Below the pieces are notes generated by a model, which was not told the DNA's origin, ran no database searches, and saw nothing but the letters and a program-made list of their open reading frames with translations. A DNA stretch of 64,000 nt. It comes from Zygnema circumcarinatum SAG 698-1b. Lineage: Eukaryota > Plantae > Zygnematophyceae. Location of the stretch: contig CM074808.1 of the NCBI GenBank assembly GCA_037447605.1, forward strand, positions 3,968,001 to 4,032,000, given 5' to 3'. The position numbers and the translations under genes were made by a program. Of the stretch, positions 9,736 through 50,200 are shown piece by piece. Every line of letters starts with the position of its first letter. Position 1 is the stretch's first letter.

Positions 9736-10240
9736 CTTGACTTGACTTGACTTGACTTGACGGGAGGGATCTGACTTGAGTTGGTTTGTGTAAGAAGTCT
9801 GCTTCAAATCGGCTGCTGAAAGGGCTCCAGCTTTGGTCACGGGTTCAGCGTTCCTCTCTGTGCTTGTATATAAGTGTAAGTTCGTGTTCTATGCAGTTCC
9901 AGTTCCAGTTTCGAGAGCAGTTAGTTTCAGTTCAGTTTGTAAGTTTTGGCGTTATTCTTTATTTTTTGTAAAGCAATGTCTGGTGATGTAGTACCAACCG
10001 CCCATATTCGCACGTTTTGTTTGGTTTGTAAAAGGAGTGAAGACGTATAAGGAGCGTTTTAGTGTGTTCCTAGCGTGGAATTACTTTGGTATAACTTGTG
10101 AGTCATGTGCAATAAAAAATTACAAGAACTTTTATGTAAAATTTTGCTTCCTCCCAATAGTGGAGTTTCTAAGTGTGCGCCCAACCAGAGTTCAGATGTT
10201 TGGAGCCCTTTCGGTTGTGCTTGATTTCAGGGTGCAGAAG

Positions 10241-10242
<2 letters not shown>

Positions 10243-10314
<72 letters not shown>
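10243..10314. repeat. (ATGCCC)12 hexamer microsatellite
   Basis: Perfect tandem array between the convergent 3' ends of PTOX and the Rieske-like gene. Confidence 0.95.
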
Positions 10315-10700
10315 GCTCACCACGACAAAGAAGCAAAGCGTACATCTGTGTGGGCTCCTCAATACTGCAGTCGGCACTGGGGCCAGTTGAGAGGTGATTC
10401 CGTTGGCAATCCAAAACGCAAAACTTCCGTCACATGACGAATCAGTCAACTGATGACAACCCTAATTAATTGAAAATGAAATTTTGGCAAAATTGTATCT
10501 TTCTGGCCTATGTCGCTAAAGCTAGAGGTAAAAAAACAAAACAAAAAACTCGAGTGTTGTTCTACTATAATCAAATTGAAAGAGGAGCTTTGAAATCCAA
10601 GTCGATGAAACCCTAATGAAGAAAATCTCTCTCCCTCCCCTCCCCTCTCTCTCTCTCTCCCTCTCTCTCTCTCTCCCTCTCTTTTTTCTCTCTCTGCCTT

Positions 10701-12351
10701 CTACTTCAAGGAAACATAAACGTACCCTCCTTCCGAGCGAGTAGCGGAATATACCTGCCCACACGAAAATATAATTAGCAAAAAAGAATTCCCAAAAAAA
10801 CAAAACTAAAAAGAAACTAAACCCAATACCGATGTCTCTTTCAAAATATTAAAAACAAAACTCTAGATGAAATTCCTCAAGGTTTTAGGAGAGCACCTTC
10901 ATCTTCTCCCGGTCGGCGTTCTCTTTCAAGGCTCCAATAAAGAAAGTAAGCGGCCCTTTTTTCGGACACCACTCGACCACCGCTCCGTCAAGAAGAGAGA
11001 ATTCGGAGCGGCAGAGAGGGCACTCGAAAGTTGGAACCTTTGCACTATCCTCTTTTACCTGCATACCCAAAGTAAAAAATTACCAAAGAACAAGGGGGAG
11101 GGGGGCTGTGAGAGGGGTTGTAAAACGCATCAGTAGAATCATCCAAAAAGACTGGAACGGAAAGGAGCCATGGATTGGATCCAACTGAAGCGTCTTCCTC
11201 TCCAAACCTCTTTTTCTTCTTCTAACCTCTCCAACCCTATCGCTTTCCAGCTCACTTTCTCTCCACTTTCCCATCCTCCCCTTCTCCTCAACTGGCTCTC
11301 CCTCTCATTATTTCCCTCTCTCTCCCCTCCGCATACATTCTGATTCAGAGAGGAAATTCAGGGTTAACCTTTCCTTCGATAAGCGGAAAACTGCACGCTG
11401 GGCAGTTTGCGTCGACAGCCAACAACATTTCTGATAAATTCACTACGACGTATCTGCACCGAAAATAAAATAAAACTTAACAAAATCATTAGTTTAAAAA
11501 AAAAACACGTTTAACGACATAGGCCTCCTCCCTGCCCCCCCTTCCTCGTCCCCCTCCTCCTATTTAAACAGAAAACCCTTCAAAATTGTAAGAAGAAGAA
11601 TTCAAATGGCTTTCCTTAGGGCCGCTCACCCCTTGCCATTCACTATGGCCGCCTTATTCTTTCCTTCTTCTAGCGAGTCCGTCGGGAATACCTGCACATG
11701 CACACCATTTGGAAACCAAGTACTCTTGATGCTCTGAAATAGTCCCTCCCACTCACACAAAGCAACGTTCCTTTAACCCCATAACCCTGAATCTTCAAAC
11801 CCTAAAATGTAAAGGTCACCTCACCTGCGTCCAGCCCTTGAGATCCTTCTCTGCCGTCAGCCCACTCTCCTTCCCTCTCTTGCCTGCCGCTCCAAACCCT
11901 CCCTGCCTCCCTGTCGCACATTTTGGGCCCTCGAAGTTTCTCCTTAATTCCCTCTCACCCTTCTCTCTCCTCTCCCACAACACCTCCTTCGGAAGCCCCG
12001 CAGAGCGCAGAGCTGAGTGGGAGCTCGACGAGGCTGCGGGCACATTGAAGCGTTCAAAGGGAAGACTCTGGAGAGGAAATGAAAGGGTTTGAGCAGTGAG
12101 AAGAATGTCAGGAGGCGCGACAAGTTATAGAATGTAAATTGTAGAAAATGTGCGCACATGCGCCATGTCTGTAGAAGAATGAATCAGTGAAGTTGCAAAG
12201 GTAGGGGACAGAGTGAGGAGAGAGCGAGAGAGAGAGTGTGACAGAACGACGAAAGGTGAAAGTGAGAGGAGAAGGTGCAGGAGACAGGCGGCACCTTGCG
12301 TGCATTGCAGCAAGCGAGAAGGCCCCGACAAGCGACCTCCGCTGTAGCCAT
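10701..12351 (-). CDS. Rieske-fold (ferredoxin-like) protein with probable plastid transit peptide and CxxC/CxxC ligand motifs
   Basis: Six phase-consistent exons: 12351-12295, 12067-11825, 11691-11630, 11453-11369, 11058-10897, 10754-10701. Mature part GWTQVFPTDSLEEGKNKAAIVNGKGYVVVNLSEMLLAVDANCPACSFPLIEGK...TFECPLCRSEFSLLDGAVVEWCPKKG...MKVYSATRSEGGYVYVSLK follows the Rieske beta-strand pattern. Confidence 0.85.
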
Positions 12352-12441
12352 GGCGGCCCCTCCCCTGAGGAAGGGAGGTTGGGACAGTATGGGAATAGAT
12401 ATGTTTGGAATAATTATATGCGTCTCACAACTAACAACACA

Positions 12442-12515
12442 TCCGTTGTCGTCCAGCCTGGTTAGGATACCTGGCTTTCACCCAGGCGACCCGGGTTCAA
12501 ATCCCGGCAACGGAG
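12442..12515 (+). tRNA. trnE-UUC: tRNA-Glu (anticodon UUC), cytosolic type
   Basis: Acceptor stem TCCGTTG/CAACGGA; anticodon arm CCTGG-CT-TTC-AC-CCAGG; T-loop GGTTCAAATCC; upstream CAA motif; TTTT a few bases downstream. Confidence 0.95.
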
Positions 12516-12558
12516 CACTTTTGCATCTCATAGCAATTTGCTCAATGTAGTCTTTTTT

Positions 12559-14326: not shown

Positions 14327-20468
<6,142 letters not shown>

Positions 20469-25873: not shown

Positions 25874-28800
25874 ATGGCTGCCCCTCGCTGGTACTTGCAG
25901 TTTACGCGCCGCCTCCCGCCGCCTGGCAAGGGAAGCGCTTCTAAGTTAGGGTTTGGGGACCCTCCTTTCTCGAAAAAATGTGGACATCCAAATGTGAACA
26001 GTGCGCTGTCTCAAAGAAACACACGGTCGAAGGATCATAGGTGCGAAAATATGCAGGGTTTGTGTTTGATCTTTTTCTTGGGAGCTTAGTTTTGCTTGAG
26101 CAGAGGTTAAAGTTAAGGTTAGAGACCAAGGTTAGGGGTGTGATTAGGGTTAAGGTTTAGGATGAGGTCAAGGCAAAGACTTGGCTGGGCTTAGGGTTAA
26201 GGCCGAGAGTGAGATTGGGTTAAGATTGGAAGCGAGTTGTTGAGAACTTGGCAAAAGCTCGTGTTTTCTCTTGATCGATAAGAGCTGCAACCTTGAAAAG
26301 ATTGTGTTTGGTGCTGCAAATGTGAAGACTTTCTAAAATTCACACGAGAAAGTCTAGTCATTCAAGTGCTAGGGTTGATTAACAAAGGATGTTGTTTTCT
26401 CCTCTACTCCCTCAGCTAGGGTCACCCTTTTTCCTCTCTCCCCTTCTCTCCCTCTCATACTCCTTTTTAAACCCTTTCGTCACGTTACTTCATCGTTCAC
26501 ATAGTCAAACCTACTAGCCTCCTTTTTCTCTCAGCTCCAAAAACCAGACCCTAAGAATTCCAGAATCTTGAATCCCACATTTAGGGTTGAGAAGGGAGAA
26601 GGAAGGTTGAGGGGAAAAGGAAGGACTTAACTTGCGATCTCGTTCACAAACCTATAAGTCATGTTTGGCGTTCTTCATCGTCGGGTTTTTCATTCCTTCT
26701 TTTAGCCGTTATTCTGAGGAGGCTGTTTGAATGATGTTGAATGCGATCAGTTAAGTTAACTCGTCTGTTTCTTTTTGTTTCTCTTGAATTTCAGGAGAAC
26801 TGTTCTTGGCATGCCGGCCGTCTTTTTCGCCGCCATTATCATTGTGGGGGCTGCTGTTGCTCTAGTGACGTCAGCAGTGATGCTGCCGCATAGTGTGGGA
26901 GGTCTTCGGTACTTTGGAGAATCTATTTATTATAGAATTTATGCGCTATTTGGGTTTGAAGAACCTCTTATGGTGACAGAAAAAGGTGAGAATTTGAATC
27001 AAACTTGAATCTTCTGGGTGATCTTTAATGATAAGTTTCTTGGCATGGCACAATGGACGGCTCTTGAAGCTTCTTGGAAATGGACTTCCATGGAAGTTCC
27101 GTTCCGTTCCCTTTCTTCCTCTTCTGTTGCCTTAGACTATGTCCTCATGTTGGGTGAAGTGGGTCGGGAATGTGAGGTCCAGATTTGCAATTATTTCAGC
27201 GCGCTCTAGATAGCTCAAAAGAGTTTCAAATTCCGCATGGGCCTGTTAAGGTGAGCTTTTCAACTGGGATAAAAGCATTTGGATGTCCGTTGCTGGAGGG
27301 GAGGGCGGGGGAGGAAGAGCGAGAGAGGGAGAGAGCGAAAAAAAAAAGAAAGAAAGGGAGGGAGAGCGAGAACCTTGTGACTTGCTGACCCTGAAATCCT
27401 AAGGCTGCAAAGTTTATGACCCGGAAAGATTGGAAAACTCCAGTTCCGTACAAACCTGAAACTCTGGAAGCTTGCAAAAATCTTCAATCCAGAAAACCCT
27501 ACCAACTTCAAAGTTTTAAACTTGCAAACTTGCAGATTGCTTTCATGTTTCTCACGAGAGGACCGCTGCCACTCGCTCTTCTCTGGGAGCGTTTCTTCAA
27601 GTACGGCTTTTGCCCTAAAACCTAAAAATCCCGAATGTCTTTCAAACCCTAAATCTGAGTTCCATGAACCCTAATACGCTTCATGTTTTGAAGTCATTAA
27701 CATTCATCATCACGAAAATGAAGCAAAAAGAGGTTTCAGGCTTTCCTCTCTCTCTCTCTCTTTCTCACTCCCCTTCCCCTCCCTCCCTCCCTCCTCCCTG
27801 TTTCACCAAGCTTGAATGAATGAACAAAAAGAAAGCCTTGCTGTTTTTTTTGGTGGGCGGGTATATATATATATTCAGAGGCCATAACGATAAATATTCT
27901 ATTTACATTCATGCCGACCCGGGGTATACATATTCCAAAGGAGAGCTACCAAAGTCTTTTGTTGGTCGGGCCATTGCAAGTGAGGTATGATTTTTTCCCC
28001 TTTGCTTTTCTTGGACATTCCCTTTGGAATTTGAGGGGCTATTCAAGGAATTCTTCTTGGGGAATGGTTTTAGGGTTTGCAGGCCTGGTTAAAGGGCGAG
28101 TAAGGACTTTTAGGGTTTCTCAAGCTTATGCAATTCTTAGAGTTTTTTGAAGTTGCAGGGCTTCTAGAGCGTCTATGGCGTATAAAACCTATTGGCTTTT
28201 CAGGCTTCCATCAGATAATTAGGATTTTTCAGGGGTTCACACATTTAAGGTTTTTATGTGCTCTGCAGTTTTTAGAGTTTTGTTTTGGGTTTCCCTTATT
28301 CCTTTGGACTTAGACCATTCCTAGCAAGCGCTCTCTCTACACCCTGGAAGCCTTAGAAACCCTAAAAGCCACATTTGGGGTTCTCGCAAAAACCTCAAAA
28401 ATCTCATAAGCCTGAAAAGTGAGTTTGATCCCTTCTCGCCCCTCCTTCCCCCCCGCCCCTTTTCCCTCCCACTCTCTCTTTTTTTTTTCTCACCCTCTTC
28501 TTTTTGCGGTGGATGAACCTTTCTTTTTTTTGGCAGCCCGTGACCTGGTCCTCCCTCAGCATGGTGGCTGCCGAACGGAGACTATTGGCTACAGCACTCT
28601 TAGACCAAAAAAATTGGTATTTCGTTCTTCTTTCCGAAGCATGCATACCGCTGCATTCCTTCCCCACCGTGTACACATACATTACGAAATCGCGGTATTC
28701 CTTTGTTACCATTACGCAGCAGGAGGACACATGGAAACCGGACATGTTGCCGGAGGTTCCTTTGAGTCGGTGGAGGAAAGGAGATGAGTGGAAGGAGCTC

Positions 28801-29217
28801 CATCGATCGCTTGCCCTAATCGTAATTAACGACACGAAATATTTTAAGAAATTCACTCGCCATTGCGCATGCAGGAGATGTGATTGGCACAAGGTGGGTG
28901 CTTCGGATGAGCACTACATTCCCACTCTTTTGTTCAATTCCAGGTCTCATCTGTTGGCCAATAGGACGCTGACGTGGGTGGATTGGAAGAACCACGACCA
29001 ATGGGAGCACCCCCATACGTACCAACCTCAAGAAGTCACCAAGGCCTTGATAAAGGAGCTCCAAGGAATGACTATTTTTAGGCCCTTCGCATACGATCGA
29101 CCAATCGAATGCTCGCTTAGGGGCCAACCGCGGACTTGTTTTATGTTCGCACGGAAATTTGCAAATACAACGCTGCGGCCACTGTTGAGATTGGCGCCTT
29201 CCGTTATGGGGTACTAG
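25874..29217 (+). CDS. Core-2/I-branching GT14-like glycosyltransferase (BC10/DUF266 family), paralog 1
   Basis: Type II TM anchor GMPAVFFAAIIIVGAAVALV (26795-26985); GPDLQLFQRAL...PVK; [35 protein letters not shown]; final exon WSSLSMVAAERRLLATALLD...VLLSEACIPL...DEHYIPTLL...NRTLTWVDW...CFMFARKF. First exon 25874-25944 is tentative (phase-2 donor mirrors paralog 2); the alternative start is ATG 26811. Confidence 0.9.
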
Positions 29218-34988: not shown

Positions 34989-36083
34989 CTACCCCCTCCC
35001 TTTCCTCCCCACCTCCTCCCTCACCTCCCATTCCTCCTTCACCACCTTTCCTCCCTCCCCCCTCCTCCCCCTCCTCCCCCCTCCCCCTCCCCCTCTCCCT
35101 CTCCCCTCCCCCTCCCCCTCCCCCTCCCCCTCTCCCTCTCCCCTCCCCCTCCCCCTCCCCCTCCCCCTCCCCCTCCCCCTCCCCCTTCCCACCCCCCCCG
35201 GCCCCTCGAACCCCAGCACGTCCCCGAAGCGCGGGTTGAGGAAGGCGCTGGAGTGCCCAAAGTTCGTCCTCGCGGCGGCCCCTCTCACAGCGCGCGCCGC
35301 GCGGTCGTACGCGAGCGCGGCCTCCTCCGCGCTCTCGAACGTGCCCAGCCACGCGCGCACGCCGAACTTCACGTCCTTCAGCTCCGCGATCCACCGCCCG
35401 GAGGCGCGCTGCCGCACGCCCTTGTACTTGAGCTCGGAGGCCGACCGCCGCCGGCGCTTGCGAGGGGGAGGGGGAGGGAGAGAGGAGGGAGAGGGGGAGG
35501 GGGAGGGAGAGGGAGAGGGAGAGGGGGCGGGGGCGGGGGCGGATTGGGAGGCGGCATGGAACGAGGGGGCAGTTCCTCGGACTGTTGGGGTTGTGTCGGT
35601 GGAGGAGACGGAGAGGAGGCGGAGGGGGTTCTTTGTGACGGAGGGCTGTTCCGTCGCGACGGACTGATCGGAGGGGCTCCATGCGGAGGCGGAGACAATT
35701 GCGGGTAAGGCGCTTGTTCCGCTGCTGTCTCTCTCTGAGAGAGAGGGTTCAGAGAAGGTGCATTTGACCTCTCCCTCACTCTCTCTCCATCCCTCTCTCC
35801 GTACCTCCTCTGCATCCCACTCCCACTCCCTCTCCCTCCCTCTGTCCCTCTCCGCCTCCAGCCGGAGCTTCGACTCGCAGAGGAAGTCACTGAGCTCCAT
35901 GAGAGGGGATGGAAGGGATGACGTGGTCTCTGCGGGTTCCACCACGTGGCGCGTGCAGGGCGCGCTCCAGCAGCTTCTGGCAGCGTCCATGGGCGGCAGG
36001 TCGTCCGCGGCGGACGGGAACATGTCCCCCAGCAGCCGCGCCCACTCCCGCTCCAGGGCGCAGTTGAACGGATAGTCGGACAT
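34989..36083 (-). CDS. AP2/ERF transcription factor (single AP2 domain)
   Basis: ATG 36083; NLS RKRRRR; AP2 domain [56 protein letters not shown] (~35426-35258). The C-terminal RG/EG tail may be read-through into an intron or UTR. Confidence 0.9.
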
Positions 36084-36323
36084 GGCGGGAGGGAGAGAGC
36101 GAGACGGAGCGAAAGGCCGTAGAGAGAGAGAGAGCAGAGAGAGAGCAGAGAGAGAGAGCAAAGAAAGAGAGAGAGAAAATATATAGAGAGCAGAGAGAGA
36201 GCAGAGAGAGAGAGAGAAGAGAGAGAGAAGAGAGAGAGGGCAGAGAGAGAGCAGAGAGCAGGGAGGGGGGGAGGGAGGGAGGGAGGGAGTGGAGCGTGAC
36301 GGACGTAGTGGCAGCGCCGGCTC

Positions 36324-36329
36324 TTTATA
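36324..36329 (-). promoter_or_regulatory. TATA box of the AP2/ERF gene
   Basis: Minus strand ctctcTATAAAgagcc, ~240 nt upstream of the ATG, followed by a CT-rich leader. Confidence 0.6.
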
Positions 36330-38208
36330 GAGAGGTGGGCGGCGCACTCGAGTACGTGGACTTCACTGGTTGACCAGGCGGACGAGTCTTGCCGGCCCCG
36401 GACCGCGCTCGTACGGACGAGCAGCGCCGCCGGCCGCCGCGCGGACGCGGCCGGCTGCCGGCGACGGCTGGCGGCCGGGATCGACGAAGTACGAGTTCTG
36501 GATCTCAGCTCGTGGCCGTACGGTACAGAACGAGGTTTCGGGGAGATTCAGGTCTCTAAGGTTAGTCCGAGGCAGCAGGCGGAGCGGACTTTGACTTTGG
36601 ACTTTAGGGCAATTTGGCTCGTGGCGCTCCAGGAAGGGTACGTGGCGAGCGGAGCGGAAATTGAGGGAGGCGGACGAATGAGAGTGGAGATTTGGACACT
36701 ATTGATGGATTTGTGGTATGATTAATTTCTGGATTCTGTTGACTTCGTGCGTATGACGTTTGTCCTTTTGGCGTTGTTATGTCAGGATGGGGGAGAATCA
36801 CCGGCGCGTATGGGCGACGTGACATTCTCTGATTGGCTGCGTGACGCCTTCTCCGTTTTGACAGCAACTTTGCCGCGGACTTTTGCACGCCGCGTGACGT
36901 GTCATGATCCACGTGGCATTCGGAGAGCAGGTGGTAGTAATGACAGTGTCGCTGAGTAATGATCACACTGGTTTCAAATGGACGGTCTCGATGGCATAAA
37001 CTCGTTTCTGTGCAGATCGGACCGTCCATTGCTTAGTCAGTACCAAAATTTGTTGGAGCGCCAAGCAAGCAAGAGCCACCGACCACCTGGTGAAGTTTCC
37101 TGGCAGTAGAGGTCGCCAGGGCGGCAACTTTGTCGTTTTCTGAGTACCTTCGATACATCGCCATATCGCCGGCGCATCGGCGGCGAAGTTGCAGGCTGAC
37201 GGCAGGCCGGTGAAAGTCAGCGGCAGTCAAACTCTGGGCCGGCTCTCGTACAAGGCCGGCTCTCTCTCAACCAAACAACAGCTTGTTCTTGTATTACTAG
37301 ATTTAAACGAAAATCGAACAAAGTAAGAATTATATTTTTATATTTTTTAAAATTTAAAAGAATTAAGCTTGCTGACGATTTGCTTACATCACATGAGCGG
37401 TGCACATGCGGAGGGGTCCAAGTTTGCAACCTGCAAACTGGTTTACGGAGACTCTTAAACTTTGGACCCCAATAGCGTCTAATTGGGCGTACCGCCCTCT
37501 GCCATTTCAGGTTCAAACTGCGAACCAAGTTTGACAGCCCCTTAAATAAAATTCAACTTTCCTCCCCCCTCTCACCCCTCCTCCCTTTCTCCGATTGGGC
37601 CCCTTAAAGAGCGCACCCTCACACCTTCCCTATCGCGGCATTAACAAACAAAGCATTGTTACATAAATGGCATATCCATTTTTATTTCACAAAAAAATCA
37701 TAAATCCGTGATGAAAGTGCGAAGCTATCATGCAGAACTGAAGGCATTCCGCCTCCACCTCCCACACATACACACATGCATGCATGCATGCAGCGCCGTC
37801 TCAATGAGCATTTTGGTACAAGTCAAACCTGGTCAAACTCAGTGAAGTAAGTCAAGCTCAGTCAGCATGTCCCCAGCCCTGACCCCGCGGCGCATTCTTC
37901 GCTCTCAGCCCTCCGCTTCATCGCTTGGCACCGACCAGCTTGCTGCTATGCACACATACATTTGCTCACATAGAACGACATCGACATCTTATGTATAACG
38001 AATCATTACATCTATCTTCCTTTCTCTTTCTCTCTCTCGCTCTCTCGCTCTCTAGCTCTCTCGCTCTCTGGCTCTCTCGCTCCCTCTCTCCCGCGCTCTC
38101 CCGCGCTCTCGCTCTCCCGCTCTCCCGCTTTTCCTCTCTCCCGCGTCCTCGCTCTCGCGCTCTCGTTCTCTCTCTCCCACTCTCTCTCTACACATCTCTC
38201 TCCCTCTA

Positions 38209-44279: not shown

Positions 44280-47200
44280 CTACCCTGACAACTCGAACTC
44301 GTTGAAGCTCGGCAAATGGTACACCGAATTATTGCCTCCCCCGTTGTTGGAGCCATGCGCATGCGCATGTGCATTTGCATACTCCAGCCCTCCCGAGCCT
44401 TGGCTTTGGCCATAGACAGGATACCCCCTTTTGGTTCTTGAGCCGCCATGGTTCACACTTTCTAATTGCACCTCGGAGTTCCGAGACGAGGAAGGTGAGG
44501 GTCTACTTCCCGCTCCTCCTCCAGCGGTATTCCCAGGATCCAACAGGGCTAGAAGTTGAATAAGTTCGTCTTCATCCGCAGCATCGGAGGCCTCCCTCCC
44601 GTCCCCTGCCGCGACATAATGCCCATTTCCACGACTTTGTACATGTCCGTTGCTCGGAACGGAAACGGACTCCCGAGGTTGAGGCTGTGTATGACTGTAC
44701 AGATTTTCGGGCCACGAAGACCGAGTGGGATCCTGCTCTCCACTCCTTTGCACTCGACCCGGCTGAGGCGTAGTGAAAGAGCCGTTAACTTGATTATGCA
44801 TATAGTTGGGAGTACTGGAATTATATGATATAGCAATAGTAGGAGCGTAGCTCGTGTGCTGAGGAATCTGTCTGCTGTGAGACCCTTGACTTGGAGCTGA
44901 GAAACCGTTTCCAACATAAGCTCCTTGAGAAGGTGGTGGGGGGTGGTGGTGAGAGGGGGGTGCACACTGGGGGGGTCTAGAAGGCTGGGTGGAAAAGGGA
45001 GGAGCATGGGAGGGAAGGGGAGGAGGGAGAAAGGTTTGAGGAGGGATAGCTGGGGATTGCGAGGGAACAGAGAGGGGAGGAAGGGCCCAACCAGAAGGGG
45101 CGCCATTTGTGACCCCACCTTGTGGATTTAAAGCTTTACTATGGCTCTGCATATGGGCAGCAGGACCTCCCGTTTGGCTAAGGCTGGAATTATGGCCTTG
45201 GAAAGAGGTAGGTCCAAGAGGAGGAAGCTGAACTCCATCGTTAAAGAGAGCAACAGACTCTTCACCTCTCAAGGAACGCACAGAGAGAGCCGGAGAAAGG
45301 GGAGCCTGCGGAGACGAGATAGCGGAGGAGGACACAGAGGCAGGGCCGACCTTCGAATTGGGAGGAGCTGTTCTGTCAGATATAGAAGGACTTGGGGCGC
45401 TTTGAGCTTGGTCCAAATGACCATTTGGAGAATCTATTCGCGCTTGAGCCCTCTTCACCTGATAGCAGTCATTCCCCACCCAGGATGTGTGACAAGGTGC
45501 GGGCCTCTTTGAACGACACAAATTATCAACATTAAAGAGGGAAAGAACAAGGCAGTAACAGAGAAAAGGGAAGAGGCCGGGGCAACGAGGGAATATAGGA
45601 AGAGATCACAGGAGGCTGAAGATGACTGGAGACGAAAGAGAGGGGAGGGCGAAAGAAGCGGAGAACATGAAAGGGACTGCTCACCTCTACTCGTCTTCCA
45701 GCAAGAGCTACCCAATGCTTCTGCACGGCCACCTCAGCATCACTCGGGTCTTCAAAGAGGACAAAACCGAACCCCCTTGACCTCTGACTTCCATCTTCAT
45801 CCATTCCACAAATTACAACAGCATCCCGAACTCGGCCAAATTGCTCTTCGAAGTGCTCCCCCAACTCCTCTGACTTGATAAAGTGCGGTAATCCGCCCAC
45901 GAAAACCTTTCTGAAACCCAGCAACCCCACAACAGTCTTGAAACCAGGTCCAAAGGAGCTTAACTTTCCTAAGAAGTCAACACATATCCTCATGGAGATA
46001 TGTTGTCAAGGGGAAGTGAAGGAGCATGGCTTTGGTTCCATTAGCCAATCGATATTAAACCATTGTATCCAGAAGAATGAAGAAGAGGAAAGAGAGAGAG
46101 GAGGTGCTCCCCCGCCAAAGAAAGAAGAGGGAATGAAGTGATACTATGAGTGTCATCATAAAACCTGGAAAACTAAAACTGTGTAAAGGAAAAGTCTAGC
46201 TCTGCATGAAAAAACCAAAGCGAATTCAACGCAAAACGACTAGTAGGCTTCATATGAAGACCCCAAAGAATTCACCTTGCCGTGTACTCTTCATCATCAC
46301 TCCCACTCGAGGCAAGGCTTGAAGCAGTTGAAGGCCTCCCTGTAGCACTTCTGCCTGCAAGCAAGAAGGGCCTGAGCTCCGTCTCTCCATGCGCAAATTT
46401 ACATTTGGTTCCATGCGGACAAAGTCCCTTTTCATAGTGCTGGCAAAGCTTAGTCTTAAAATTCTTCACTGATGTGTCCCCTGCCTTTGCTCCACTGCTC
46501 GACCCCGAAGCCCCTACTCCTCCGTAAAACCGCAGCTCCTCTTCACTATGTGCAAAATGGCACTTGCTTCCATAAGAGCAGCCCTCAGCCGTCCCGTAAA
46601 ACCGGCACATTGCGGTTCTATATGCGGGGAGATTCGCAACTATTTCCGTCTTAGCTATGCTACTTCCATCAGCTACTTCTCCAGATATCTTGGACCATTG
46701 AGCAGCTTTACCATCCCATGCTTTTTGTGGATCCGTGGGACACGTGATGGGGGGCTCGGGCTCTTGAAGAAGAGCCCTCATTTCTGGGGAAGGTGCAAGC
46801 TGGCCGGGTCTCTGATGTCTCAAACTGACCACATGGCGGTTGGAGCCATAGTGGAGGAGGACTTGCGTGCATTCCAAGTGATTGTTCTGCCATACATAAA
46901 ATGGTGAAGACGTTAGGTTTGAAAGTAAAAGCTGAATGCTTCATATTGACCTGTGCTCTCACTCTTAGGACTGAATAACTGGAGATCAGTGAAGGGCTAC
47001 AAATACAAACATGGATGAAAAAAAGCAAGAACCATCTCTGCGAACTGGCACCCCGGAATTTCAATAGATTCACCACGTTTTCTAGAATTCGTCGGGTTAC
47101 CCTGCGCCTGAGTTTGAACCATATTCGTACCTTAACAGCATAGTGAAGGGGAGTCTCCTTAGTTGCAGCTAACACATTGGCCCCTGAACGCTCCTTCTCC

Positions 47201-50200
47201 AAAATCATTCTCAGAGCTTCAGCATGGCCATGGCCTGCAGCTGTATGTACAGGAGTTGCCCCCAACTTATTCCCCATCAATACATTTGCTCCACCTTCAA
47301 GGAGCTTCTTCACCAAAGTGTTGTCCACTTCTCTTCGATTGCCGGGAGTTGCCTGCAGGCATCCAAAAGTTAAATGGTTAATGGGAAAACGAGTTGTATA
47401 AGGGCGAGCATAGGAAACAGAGGAGAATGGAAGGACATGGTTACAAAGTGGCTCACAAGAGAAAGGAGGGAGGTGGGATAGAGAGGCATGGAGAGAAAAC
47501 ATCAATTAAACTACTCAGTAAGTTACCTGTTCGGGAGAAATCAAAACATTCTTTTCCTCCCTTTCTCAGAATGATAAAATGCTTACCCCATGGTGCCACA
47601 GAGACGACAGAAGAGGGGAGAGGAGACGAAAGGGAGAAAACATGGGAGATGAAGAAAGCGCGAGATGAGAGGAGGGAGATGGAGAGAAACAGGAGGTAGA
47701 GGAAGAGGAGAGCAAAGAGGTGAGGAGGATAAAGACAAGCGAAGAGGATCACAATAATGACAAGATCGGCAGACCATAAGGGTATTCACGAATAAACAGG
47801 AAGTTCCAAATAAACGCAGAAGTTTTCTGAAATGAGCAGATGAAAGAAAATCGTACCTGTCTCAATACCCAATGAAGTGCCGTATTTCCATCAGCATCTG
47901 TCTCATTCACTCCTGCTCCGGCGCCTAAGAGGAGTCCCACAAGCACTCCATCATTCGCTTGTGCTGCTCTTAATAAAGGAGCAATCTCTGCGCTTTGCGG
48001 ATGAGCTGAAAGCTTTGGATTGAAACATAGTACGGCTTCCAGCACCCGCATAGCATCTTTTCTCAGAGGGCTTTCTTCAATACCCATGTTCTGAGTTGGC
48101 GAATTTTCTAGAGAAGTTCCCCAAGCTTGGATTGCAGCTATATCGAACGACTTTTGCCTTATTCTATCATGGAGATTACTCAATCGAATAATCTTCCCCA
48201 AAAGTAGGTCTATTAGTGTACCAGATCCCTCATCTTCACAACCTGTATAGTCAGATCCGCGAGCTATACTATTGACGAAGGAACTGCGGGTGACAAGAAG
48301 AAGAGCTACTAGGGGCACTAGTTGAAGTTGTGAGGCTAACTGAAATGCAACTCGTACAAGCTGATCTTTACTTTTCTGCAACCATAACGTCACCCACAAA
48401 AACAGGTTTAGAAACGGTAACCACAGGAGCATACAAGAATCAAATTTTCAAGTAGTGCGGGGACATCTGCTCTCCATGCCAAGCCCTCCAGTGTACGATA
48501 ACGCAAACAGTCTATGCTATAGGACTCAAGGAGTATCCCAGCTCTCTTGAATAAAACTAAGATTTCGTTTGCTGCTACAACGGAATTTCAGAGCATACGA
48601 ATCCACATTCGCTATCATGTACGCGCTGAAAGAACGAGCAAATAATCGAGATAATCTCTTAGGCTCGACGTTTCCATGGTTGGATGCTCCTATGCTGAAG
48701 CAATCTTAACCTATTTTCCAATTCAAATATGACGTACATTCCACAATCATGTGCTAATTACATGAAAATTTGCCAAAAAATATTCAAACTTGATTGCGGC
48801 CTGTGTGCTGTAAACAAGCTTGCCTTTGACCAAATCCAAAGACATAGGTTCCTAAAAAATATTGTAACAAAACAACTTCCTTGTTTACCCTCTGCTTAAG
48901 CTGCCGTATTCGCTATATAAGCTAAACTATTGTCACTGGTTGCACAAATAGATGTTCAAACCCAAATCGAATAGGTTTGATGCGCATTTCCAGTGAACTG
49001 CAGAACTCACTTCAACAATTATGCGAACAGCATTCAAGTCCTTTGCTCGGAGCCTCTCCACAACAGCTCTCGAAGATGTTTCTGGCCCGAAATCAATCTG
49101 CATAACAATGCAATTTCATCAAGAGTAACAATACAGCGTTATACTCTTATAATTTATTTTGATAGTATATGTGAACACTCTTTCTGCCCATCGAAGTAAA
49201 GAATTCCAAATAAACCTGCAACGAAAGTGTGGGGATCTGCCACCTTCGCACAAGCCAAACAGTTCATAGTAACTCTGCTAAGGAGTGAAACCTATAACAA
49301 AATGTCAAAATTGGTAAGTTACGGAAAAATCTACCTTCAGTTTTGAACTGTAAAGTGCCTCCTCTAGAGGACAAAGACCTTGCTTACTCCTTAAAGCAGA
49401 ATTTGCCCCACTCTGGAAAAGGAGCTCTATACATTGTGTGCTGTAAGGACACATAGAAAAGCCATACCACTAATATCAGCGAAACGGTAAAAATCAAAAA
49501 GGGAAAAAATTGGTCTCAAGAACATTCACGTTACGCAAATTCACACACATGCAAACGAGTCCAGACTCGTTGAAATTCTGCCCATTCAATAAAGAACTCA
49601 ATCCTCAGAAACAAGTATCACCAAGCAACTTGCTTCTTTCATTCGTAGGATTACGATAGAAACAGATAAAACTAATGATTCAAAAGCTCATCATTTCGCA
49701 GCTATCACTGGACCTCTCTACAAGCTCATTGGCCTGCACACGGTACTAGACAAATAACCGGACGGAGCTCTGCCACCAATGCTTCAATATGCAGGCCTAT
49801 GAACTACAAACAGGAAACTACGCGCATATATGCATACGAACATGAAACAATAGTCTCTCGTAACGTCCACACGCAACTTGTGAGGGCTGACACCCTTCCG
49901 CCACAAGAAATCGACCTGATTCGCAAAGTCCACTTGCATAATGTGTTTCACAAATCCAGAAACCTCACAAACATACCTCTGGTTCAAGGCAGCATGATGA
50001 AGAGCTACACGTCCATCTAATTCATCTACTGCATCCACCGGAACCTGCACATTAAAATTTAAAGGAGCCGGGATTCAGCACTTGAAGGAAAACCTGGACG
50101 AGACATTTCTGATGTTCTGCATATTCACTGGGATCCGCAAGTAACTGAGCGGACTCATGTTACGATATTGTCCGGAATGTTCGTCATTATACAAAGCTTT

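What the first reader, a model, noticed from the sequence alone, without database searches (positions are those of the whole stretch)
10701..12351. Rieske fold whose two His ligands are absent: CPAC ... CPLC (four-Cys site)
Established: Rieske clusters use CxH...CxxH (2 Cys + 2 His). Seen: box 1 is NCPACSFPL (11404-11393) and box 2 is ECPLCRSEF (11022-11011); no His remains, and there are two CxxC motifs about 20 aa apart, plus the WCP motif. Inference: it could bind an all-Cys [2Fe-2S] cluster with a much lower potential, a rubredoxin-like mononuclear Fe or Zn, or act as a thiol switch in the plastid. That would be a biochemically distinct Rieske-like class.
Basis: partly seen in the sequence, partly recalled or inferred. 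Interest (0 to 1): 0.7.

Follow-up and report, generated by a model that had tools for sequence, protein, structure and literature searches.

The report
Rieske-fold protein with four-cysteine metal site
This expressed six-exon plant-lineage gene encodes a small Rieske-fold protein whose two histidine ligands are replaced so that two CxxC motifs remain, a pattern conserved from streptophyte algae to ferns that most likely holds a single iron or zinc ion rather than an iron-sulfur cluster.

Summary
A minus-strand gene (12351-10701) has six exons. All five introns are confirmed by spliced transcript contigs from two studies, and no alternative splice form restores histidines. Box 1 reads CPAC (11404-11393) and box 2 CPLC (11022-11011), 20 residues apart. 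The four domain exons hold five Cys and no His.

It is not a one-off. Uncharacterised homologues in Klebsormidium, Chara, mosses, liverworts and ferns all keep CxxC[K/Q]FP ... CPLCH ... CPKDGP. They pass Pfam Rieske_2 and Rieske thresholds. A confident AlphaFold model of the Sphagnum member superposes on Rieske ferredoxins (Z 17, rmsd 1.4 Å).

Profile alignment puts the four Cys exactly where an engineered archaeal Rieske ferredoxin (H44I/K45C/H64C) acquired a rubredoxin-like mononuclear Fe/Zn(Cys)4 site. The plain double His-to-Cys mutant of that protein failed to assemble a cluster.

Best reading: a natural Rieske-fold protein with a mononuclear Cys4 metal site, probably plastid-targeted. 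Metal, location and function are untested.

The window's copy is the most divergent member (39-51% identity) and the only one lacking the otherwise invariant His after the fourth Cys.

I call it a new variant of a known kind, of moderate to high interest.

The parts
12295..12351 (-). Exon 1: start codon in a GCCGCCATGGC context, 19 codons (MATAEVACRGLLACCNARK), start of the presumed targeting peptide
   Evidence: Translation. Joint 12295/12067 is seen in contigs of runs X2 and X3 (28 letters on the short side). Run X4 holds an intron-1-retaining contig.
11825..12067 (-). Exon 2: 81 codons. A Ser/Ala-rich stretch is followed by a charged linker that ends in KDLKGWTQ, the first strand of the domain.
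   Evidence: Translation. Contigs cover it without a break in all four runs, and joint 11825/11691 is present in four runs. GW is invariant in the family.
11630..11691 (-). Exon 3: 20 codons plus 2 nt (VFPTDSLEEGKNKAAIVNGK-G), carrying the family motif EGKNKA
   Evidence: Translation. Joints 11691/11825 and 11630/11453 are present in four runs. Alignment A1.
11369..11453 (-). Exon 4: 1 nt plus 28 codons, carrying ligand box 1
   Evidence: Translation. Joints are present in four runs.
11393..11404 (-). Box 1, CPAC. The first Cys aligns with the Rieske Cys ligand, Ala sits at the Rieske His position, and the second Cys is one residue later.
   Evidence: profile alignment to 3gce, 2qpz and 5bok: C-t-s-C against C-S/T-H-A/G. 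Both Cys are invariant in the family.
10897..11058 (-). Exon 5: 54 codons, carrying ligand box 2 and the family-specific CP loop
   Evidence: Translation. Joints are present in four runs. This exon alone found the family in the phmmer search.
11011..11022 (-). Box 2, CPLC. The first Cys aligns with the Rieske Cys ligand and the second Cys sits at the Rieske His position. It is followed here by Arg instead of the family's invariant His.
   Evidence: (C-P-L-C against C-P-L-H).
10951..10971 (-). WCPKKGP, the fifth conserved Cys in the loop that corresponds to the Rieske 'Pro loop' (family consensus [YWFH]CPKDGP). It begins a conserved 20-residue insertion that the model predicts with low confidence.
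   Evidence: (block pLDDT 58-72). Cys-less relatives P0022 and P0023 also keep it.
10701..10754 (-). Exon 6: 17 codons plus stop (VYSATRSEGGYVYVSLK*). It forms the last two strands, with no C-terminal membrane helix.
   Evidence: Translation. Joint 10897/10754 is present in four runs.

Best explanation
This is an expressed nuclear gene for a protein of about 220 residues: an N-terminal targeting-like extension followed by a single soluble Rieske/NirD-fold domain of about 120 residues. It is a divergent member of a conserved, uncharacterised streptophyte family found in Klebsormidium, Chara, mosses, liverworts and ferns.

In this family the Rieske ligand set CxH...CxxH has been rewritten to CxxC...CxxC. 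The two loops at the tip of the fold each present a rubredoxin/zinc-ribbon-type knuckle. The four thiolates most likely hold one metal ion tetrahedrally (Fe as in rubredoxin, or Zn as in zinc ribbons) instead of a [2Fe-2S] cluster.

If the metal is Fe, the protein would be a one-electron carrier with rubredoxin-like rather than Rieske-like properties. If it is Zn, the site is structural and the domain acts as a docking module, as NirD and PSB33 do. In that case the conserved CPKDGP...K.K loop next to the site is the likely contact surface.

Shown here: the gene model, its expression, the fold (on a homologue), the positions of the Cys relative to Rieske ligands, and their conservation. Inferred: metal binding and its type, plastid location, and function.
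For: Gene and expression. Spliced contigs confirm all five introns.

Family. The phmmer search with exon 5 and the word search with the Sphagnum protein returned homologues from Sphagnum, Ceratodon, Physcomitrium, Marchantia, Riccia, Calypogeia, Adiantum, Ceratopteris, Pteridium, Chara and Klebsormidium.

Motif conservation. The 16 full-length members share 31 invariant columns, including five Cys. Every member reads CxxC[K/Q]FP, CPLCH and CPKDG.

Fold. Pfam Rieske_2 scores 50.4 bits against a cutoff of 27, and Rieske scores 24.7 against 20.3. The AF2 model of P0008:92-223 has pLDDT 86.4, with about 90-93 over both boxes. Foldseek's top hits are NirD 4aiv and the Rieske ferredoxins 1fqt and 2e4q, with TM 0.82-0.89 normalised by target. 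VIA-align gives Z 17.0, rmsd 1.4 Å over 103 residues to 3dqy, and all 45 rows above Z 6 are Rieske folds.

Ligand register. The profile-to-PDB alignments place C-t-s-C on C-S/T-H-A/G and C-P-L-C on C-P-L-H.

Precedent. [quoted passage not shown] The Rieske loops were already noted to resemble rubredoxin and zinc-ribbon knuckles (PMC2946596).

Weak side evidence. Zinc-ribbon and zinc-finger Pfam models give sub-threshold matches across the two boxes.
Against: No metal, spectroscopic or proteomic data exist for any member.

The engineering precedent comes from one archaeal scaffold. The same review notes that a rubredoxin variant can assemble a [2Fe-2S] cluster, so ligand spacing is not an absolute predictor.

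All other members carry an invariant His after Cys 4, whose role is unknown. It could take part in ligation in those members.

The window's own joined protein was neither folded nor scanned. By exon, Pfam gives only E = 0.17 for Rieske_2, so its family assignment rests on alignment to homologues (39-51% identity).
Confidence: 0.6

Rival explanations
1. The four Cys ligate an all-cysteine [2Fe-2S] cluster in the Rieske scaffold, giving a plant-ferredoxin-like ligand set on a Rieske fold with a lower potential.
For: The fold and the two inner Cys ligands are those of Rieske proteins. [quoted passage not shown] A C42A rubredoxin can assemble a [2Fe-2S] cluster, so such loops tolerate both site types (PMC2946596).
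Against: In ARF the double His-to-Cys variant largely failed to assemble a cluster. The variant with exactly this family's spacing (Cys moved one residue beyond the His position) bound a single metal ion. CxxC...CxxC is the classical mononuclear knuckle pair.
Confidence: 0.17
2. The site is metal-free. The two CxxC motifs are redox-active dithiol/disulfide pairs that act as a thiol switch or as thioredoxin targets, on a NirD-like Rieske fold without a cofactor.
For: CxxC is the canonical redox-active motif. Rieske-like domains without a cofactor exist and work as protein partners (NirD 4aiv and 2jo6 are among the best structural matches; PSB33/TEF5). Cys-less relatives of this family exist (P0022, P0023), so the scaffold does not need a metal to fold.
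Against: The Cys occupy precisely the ligand positions, or the position next to one, on the two facing loops. All four are invariant together over the Klebsormidium-to-fern span. This fits a shared site better than two independent switches.
Confidence: 0.15
3. The gene is decaying, or is a mis-modelled Rieske gene whose real product keeps His ligands.
For: The window's copy is the most divergent member and has lost the family's invariant His. One run holds an intron-1-retaining contig.
Against: Spliced transcripts occur in four runs at high contig depth with an intact reading frame. All five family Cys and most invariant residues are kept. No alternative joints were seen. No exon of the domain encodes a His in the reading frame used.
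Confidence: 0.03

Closest known systems
Engineered S. solfataricus archaeal Rieske-type ferredoxin, triple mutant H44I/K45C/H64C (Iwasaki et al. 2005, as reviewed in PMC2946596)
   Same: It has a Rieske fold. The ligand set is rewritten to C-x-x-C ... C-x-x-C by removing His 1, placing a Cys one residue later, and replacing His 2 with Cys. The natural family has exactly this register. The mutant bound a rubredoxin-like mononuclear Fe/Zn(Cys)4 centre.
   Different: It is a laboratory construct in an archaeal protein. The family here is natural, eukaryotic and conserved. It also carries an extra conserved Cys-Pro loop insertion and, except in this window, an invariant His after Cys 4. Its metal content is unknown.
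Low-potential Rieske ferredoxins of aromatic-ring dioxygenases (TodB 3dqy, CarAc 3gce, NDO ferredoxin 2qpz, BphF 1fqt)
   Same: They are the best structural matches (Z 16.6-17.0, rmsd 1.4-1.6 Å over about 103 residues). They are the only PDB sequence hits of the family profile. They share the size, the IECPL context of box 2, and the absence of the bc1-type disulfide.
   Different: They have CxH...CxxH and a [2Fe-2S] cluster, and about 20% identity. They lack the CPKDGP...K.K insertion and any N-terminal extension.
NirD, small subunit of NAD(P)H nitrite reductase (Pfam Rieske_2, PF13806; 4aiv, 2jo6, 3c0d)
   Same: It gives the best Pfam model for the family and the top Foldseek hit. It is a small soluble single-domain Rieske-like protein.
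   Different: NirD has no metal ligands at all and works with NirB. This family has four invariant Cys at the site, and no NirB link is known or tested.
PSB33/LIL8 (Arabidopsis) and TEF5 (Chlamydomonas)
   Same: They are green-lineage, plastid-targeted proteins with a PF13806-type Rieske-like domain that does not carry the Rieske ligand set (PMC12164590; PMC8003979).
   Different: PSB33/TEF5 lack any metal ligands and are anchored by one or two C-terminal transmembrane helices. This protein ends 17 residues after the last intron with the final β-strands and no hydrophobic tail, and it keeps four Cys.

Membership tests
Rieske [2Fe-2S] proteins (PF00355) | Rieske three-sheet β fold with a cluster-binding subdomain | tested here: met
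   Tested on the Sphagnum homologue, not on the window's joined protein. AF2 pLDDT is 86. Z is 17.0 with rmsd 1.4 Å to 3dqy. Foldseek gives TM 0.82-0.89 normalised by target. PF00355 scores 24.7-28.8 bits against a cutoff of 20.3 on homologues.
Rieske [2Fe-2S] proteins (PF00355) | Ligand motifs C-x-H ... C-x-x-H (2 Cys + 2 His) | tested here: not met
   Box 1 is CPAC and box 2 is CPLC. The domain exons contain no His. Alignment puts Ala/Ser/Thr and Cys at the two His positions.
Rieske [2Fe-2S] proteins (PF00355) | Bound [2Fe-2S] cluster | not testable with these tools
   This needs metal and sulfide analysis and spectroscopy.
Rieske_2 / NirD-like (PF13806) | Profile match above the curated cutoff | tested here: inconclusive
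Homologues pass (36-50 bits against 27). The window's protein could only be scanned exon by exon, and exon 5 alone gives E = 0.17.
Rieske_2 / NirD-like (PF13806) | Works as the small subunit of a NirB-type nitrite reductase | not tested
   No NirB gene was looked for, and gene neighbourhood is uninformative in a eukaryote.
Rubredoxin / zinc-ribbon type M(Cys)4 sites | Two CxxC knuckles on facing loops | tested here: met
   CPAC and CPLC lie 20 residues apart. The spacing is 19-27 residues in homologues, and 56 in one Marchantia model with a likely retained intron. There are sub-threshold zinc-ribbon Pfam matches.
Rubredoxin / zinc-ribbon type M(Cys)4 sites | Rubredoxin or zinc-ribbon fold of the whole domain | tested here: not met
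   The whole domain is a Rieske fold. Only the loop geometry is rubredoxin-like, according to the literature.
Rubredoxin / zinc-ribbon type M(Cys)4 sites | One tetrahedrally bound Fe or Zn | not testable with these tools
   No model coordinates were available and there are no experimental data.
PSB33/TEF5 | C-terminal transmembrane helix or helices after the Rieske-like domain | tested here: not met
   The last exon encodes VYSATRSEGGYVYVSLK followed by a stop. Homologues also end within about 10 residues of the domain.
Streptophyte CxxC-CPLCH-CPKDGP Rieske-like family (unnamed; e.g. Physcomitrium A0A2K1IX80, Klebsormidium KFL_000090750, Chara CBR_g3933) | GW...EGKNKA...ANCxxCxFP...CPLCH...[YWFH]CPKDGP...K.K...VY motifs in order, after an N-terminal extension | tested here: met
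   Each exon aligns in register, with 39-51% identity over 119 residues. There are three deviations: S for K/Q after Cys 2, R for the invariant H after Cys 4, and KKG for KDG.

The most novel reading that the evidence does not exclude
Streptophyte algae and spore-bearing land plants carry a natural 'Rieske-fold rubredoxin': a plastid Fe(Cys)4 one-electron carrier built on the Rieske scaffold. It has no named seed-plant counterpart among the hits returned here. This would be an unrecognised redox component of non-seed-plant plastids, and a natural replay of the Rieske-to-rubredoxin conversion so far known only from protein engineering.
Probability: 0.25. Interest if true: 0.75.

Novelty: new variant of a known kind. 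Interest (0 to 1): 0.6.

Why it matters
The Rieske 2Cys-2His ligand set is one of the most constant signatures in metalloprotein biology. Known departures are losses of all ligands (NirD, PSB33).

Here nature has made the same three-position rewrite that protein engineers used to turn a Rieske ferredoxin into a rubredoxin-like centre. The result has been kept invariant from Klebsormidium to ferns.

The family gives a direct test of the idea that ligand type and spacing on the surface loops decide which iron centre a scaffold assembles. It also adds an uncharacterised, probably organellar, metal protein to the inventory of streptophyte algae, bryophytes and ferns. Genetic systems (Physcomitrium, Marchantia) are available for all the follow-up work.

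Tried and rejected
1. Pfam by exon gave only sub-threshold hits: Rieske_2 at E = 0.17 plus zinc-ribbon noise.
2. The word search with exon 5 found nothing, because its length window is 30-95 aa.
3. phmmer of exon 5 against the PDB returned only chance CxxC zinc-finger matches.
4. The word search with the Cys-less relative P0022 gave only two further unnamed fragments. Their metagenome contigs carry no informative neighbours, so whether the Cys were gained or lost stays open.
5. Cluster look-ups of the unnamed Logan and ENA hits gave no organism names. Absence from seed plants, lycophytes and hornworts is therefore only 'none named among the hits', not shown.
6. Six literature searches found no paper on a natural Cys4 Rieske-fold protein or on this family. 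The library is open-access only, so this is weak evidence of absence.
7. A search for what the red-algal chain 8jng is led nowhere.
8. A PSB33/TEF5 identity was considered and rejected, because there is no C-terminal membrane helix and the Cys are present.
9. A pseudogene or mis-splicing reading was rejected.
10. I did not measure Sγ distances, because model coordinates are not exposed.

Full report
GENE MODEL AND EXPRESSION

The region 12351-10701 on the minus strand reads as six exons with GT..AG introns:
- exon 1, 12351-12295
- exon 2, 12067-11825
- exon 3, 11691-11630
- exon 4, 11453-11369
- exon 5, 11058-10897
- exon 6, 10754-10701

I derived these from the sequence and translated each exon by reference. 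Summed, they give 220 codons.

Laying contigs of four public runs of the same organism on 10400-12450 returned spliced contigs. Their joints are exactly these boundaries:
- 10754/10897, 11058/11369, 11453/11630 and 11691/11825, each in all four runs (two studies)
- 12067/12295 in two runs of one study

All skipped stretches begin and end with CT..AC on the plus strand, which is GT..AG on the gene's strand. Exon 2 is covered without a break.

One run also holds an intron-1-retaining contig. No alternative joint appears. The runs are only guessed to be RNA, but contigs lacking canonical introns can hardly be anything else.

THE OBSERVATION

Exon 4 encodes ...AVDANCPACSFPLIEGK and exon 5 encodes VKEDSAKVPTFECPLCRSEFSLLDGAVVEWCPKKGP.... 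The four exons that make the domain contain five Cys and not a single His.

RELATIVES

By exon, Pfam gives nothing significant (Rieske_2 at E = 0.17 on exon 5). The length-limited word search was blank. I therefore ran the exhaustive phmmer search with exon 5. It gave 23 hits.

Among them are full-length proteins of 143-223 aa. Cluster look-ups and a second word search name these as unannotated or automatically named 'Rieske-like [2Fe-2S] domain-containing' proteins. Their sources are:
- mosses: several Sphagnum species, Ceratodon, Physcomitrium (A0A2K1IX80)
- liverworts: Marchantia, Riccia, Calypogeia
- ferns: Adiantum, Ceratopteris, Pteridium
- streptophyte algae: Chara (CBR_g3933), Klebsormidium (KFL_000090750)

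No seed-plant, lycophyte or hornwort protein is named among the hits. Several hits come from unnamed assemblies, so absence from those groups is not shown.

Aligned (A1), the 16 full-length members share 31 invariant columns. These include the GW that opens the domain, both Cys of box 1, F-P after it, C-P-L-C-H of box 2, D-G, and C-P-K-D-G of a following loop. Every sequence that covers these regions reads CxxC[K/Q]FP, CPLCH and [YWFH]CPKDG.

The window's exons align in register but are only 39-51% identical to any member, with Klebsormidium the best match. The other members are about 55-65% identical to the Sphagnum protein. The window's copy deviates at three otherwise fixed places: CPAC-S, CPLC-R and KKG. 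It is a long-branch member.

Earlier notes of this scan (s1-337027, s1-406432) call this genome a streptophyte alga distant from Klebsormidium. My data fit that (an AP2-domain ORF in the window; best match Klebsormidium) but do not prove it.

FOLD

The homologues pass Pfam Rieske_2 (36-50 bits, cutoff 27) and Rieske (cutoff 20.3).

An AlphaFold2 model of the Sphagnum domain (P0008:92-223, with alignment A2) has mean pLDDT 86.4 and pTM 0.77. Confidence is about 90-93 across both Cys boxes. It drops to 58-72 only in the family-specific stretch after CPKDGP.

Foldseek's best PDB matches are M. tuberculosis NirD (4aiv) and the Rieske ferredoxins BphF and BphA3. The Foldseek-independent VIA-align search gives Z 17.0, rmsd 1.4 Å over 103 of 106 residues to toluene dioxygenase ferredoxin. 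All 45 rows above Z 6 are Rieske-fold chains.

The ESM-Atlas shape search finds chlorophyte 'Rieske-like' clusters of about 210 aa as the nearest neighbours.

The fold claim is thus established for the family. For the window's protein it is inferred through the alignment.

REGISTER OF THE CYSTEINES

The family profile hits three Rieske ferredoxins in the PDB. In these alignments the family's C-t-s-C lies on C-S/T-H-A/G, and C-P-L-C lies on C-P-L-H.
- Cys 1 and Cys 3 are the two Rieske Cys ligands.
- Cys 4 replaces His ligand 2.
- His ligand 1 is replaced by a small residue (Ala here).
- Cys 2 sits one residue beyond the position of His ligand 1.

WHAT THE SITE MOST LIKELY IS

This is, position for position, the H44I/K45C/H64C design of Iwasaki and co-workers in the Sulfolobus Rieske-type ferredoxin ARF. 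According to the author's open review (PMC2946596):
- The simple H44C/H64C double mutant largely failed to assemble a cluster.
- H64C alone kept a low-potential 3Cys-1His [2Fe-2S] cluster.
- The Rieske loops have rubredoxin/zinc-ribbon-like geometry.
- A rubredoxin point mutant can assemble a [2Fe-2S] cluster, so the rule is not absolute.

On this basis I put a mononuclear Cys4 site at about 0.6, without being able to choose between Fe and Zn. I put an all-Cys [2Fe-2S] cluster at about 0.17, a metal-free dithiol/disulfide switch at about 0.15, and decay or mis-modelling at about 0.03. Nothing here measures a metal.

OTHER FEATURES

The fifth Cys (WCP here) begins a conserved insertion of about 20 residues, CPKDGPLxWxIGTLKxK, relative to Rieske ferredoxins. 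It corresponds in position to the Pro loop that covers the cluster.

Relatives that lack all four site Cys also keep it (P0022, P0023, P0040, P0059...PLDGT.Y.L.TG.V..WCP(K/R)(D/N)NPL...). Its role is therefore probably not ligation. I take it as the likely docking surface, which is an inference. Whether those Cys-less forms are ancestral or derived could not be settled.

All members have an N-terminal extension of 80-100 residues. In the window it starts MATAEVACRGLLACCNARK-SLPFERFNVPAASSSSHSALRSAG..., which is Ser/Ala-rich and poor in acidic residues at first, then highly charged. This looks like an organellar transit peptide, but no predictor was available. 'Plastid' remains an inference.

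There is no C-terminal membrane helix. This separates the family from PSB33/TEF5, the other green-lineage PF13806 proteins, which also lack any ligands.

NOVELTY

The sequences are in public databases under automatic names. I found no paper on this family or on any natural Cys4 Rieske-fold protein in six searches of the open-access library. That library misses most subscription journals.

I class it as a new variant of a known kind. It is a Rieske/NirD-fold domain, but it has a rubredoxin-type ligand set that is conserved across streptophytes and was anticipated only by an engineering experiment.
Noticed in passing
window 12442-12516 (+): A nuclear tRNA-Glu(UUC) gene lies 91 bp upstream of the gene's ATG on the opposite strand. 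Contigs of runs X2 and X3 that include exon 1 run on to at least 12450, so the 5' UTR or promoter region overlaps the tRNA gene antisense.
   Followed up: no
P0022, P0023, P0040, P0041, P0059 (database proteins; locus L001 2006-2308): These relatives lack all four site Cys (box 2 reads (V/T)PLDGT.Y) but keep the WCP(K/R)(D/N)NPL...LK.K loop. They come from unnamed metagenome and SRA assemblies. The ESM-Atlas shape search points to chlorophyte clusters of about 210 aa as the nearest neighbours.
   Followed up: partly
family alignment A1, column 266 (His after Cys 4): CPLCH is invariant in every other family member, and only the window's gene has Arg there. No explanation so far accounts for either the invariance or the loss.
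   Followed up: partly
PDB 8jng chain A (structural match to the family model): A Rieske-like subunit of the Porphyridium phycobilisome-PSII-PSI-LHC megacomplex, deposited as 'methanesulfonate monooxygenase ferredoxin subunit', is among the best structural matches (Foldseek rank 4; VIA Z 13.5 over 115 residues). This hints that soluble Rieske-like proteins dock on photosystems outside the green lineage too. The literature check gave nothing.
   Followed up: partly
P0057 (Marchantia polymorpha AXG93_291s1110) and P0050 (Adiantum nelumboides): These two database gene models carry 35-40-residue insertions inside the domain and, in P0057, a divergent C-terminus. These look like retained introns or mis-annotation rather than real variants.
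   Followed up: no
window 10240-10330 and 10626-10697: A (CA/TG)n microsatellite reads as CPCPCP/HAHAHA ORFs, and a (GA)n-rich stretch lies in the gene's 3' UTR. The reads tool skipped the (GA)n stretch as a repeat.
   Followed up: no
window 34992-36347 (-), 28504-29214 (+), 16751-17758 (-), 46711-47505 (-): Long ORFs with Pfam matches: an AP2 domain, a core-2/I-branching enzyme (Branch), the cytosolic domain of the OSCA/PHM7 family, and ankyrin repeats. These show a plant-lineage nuclear context.
   Followed up: no
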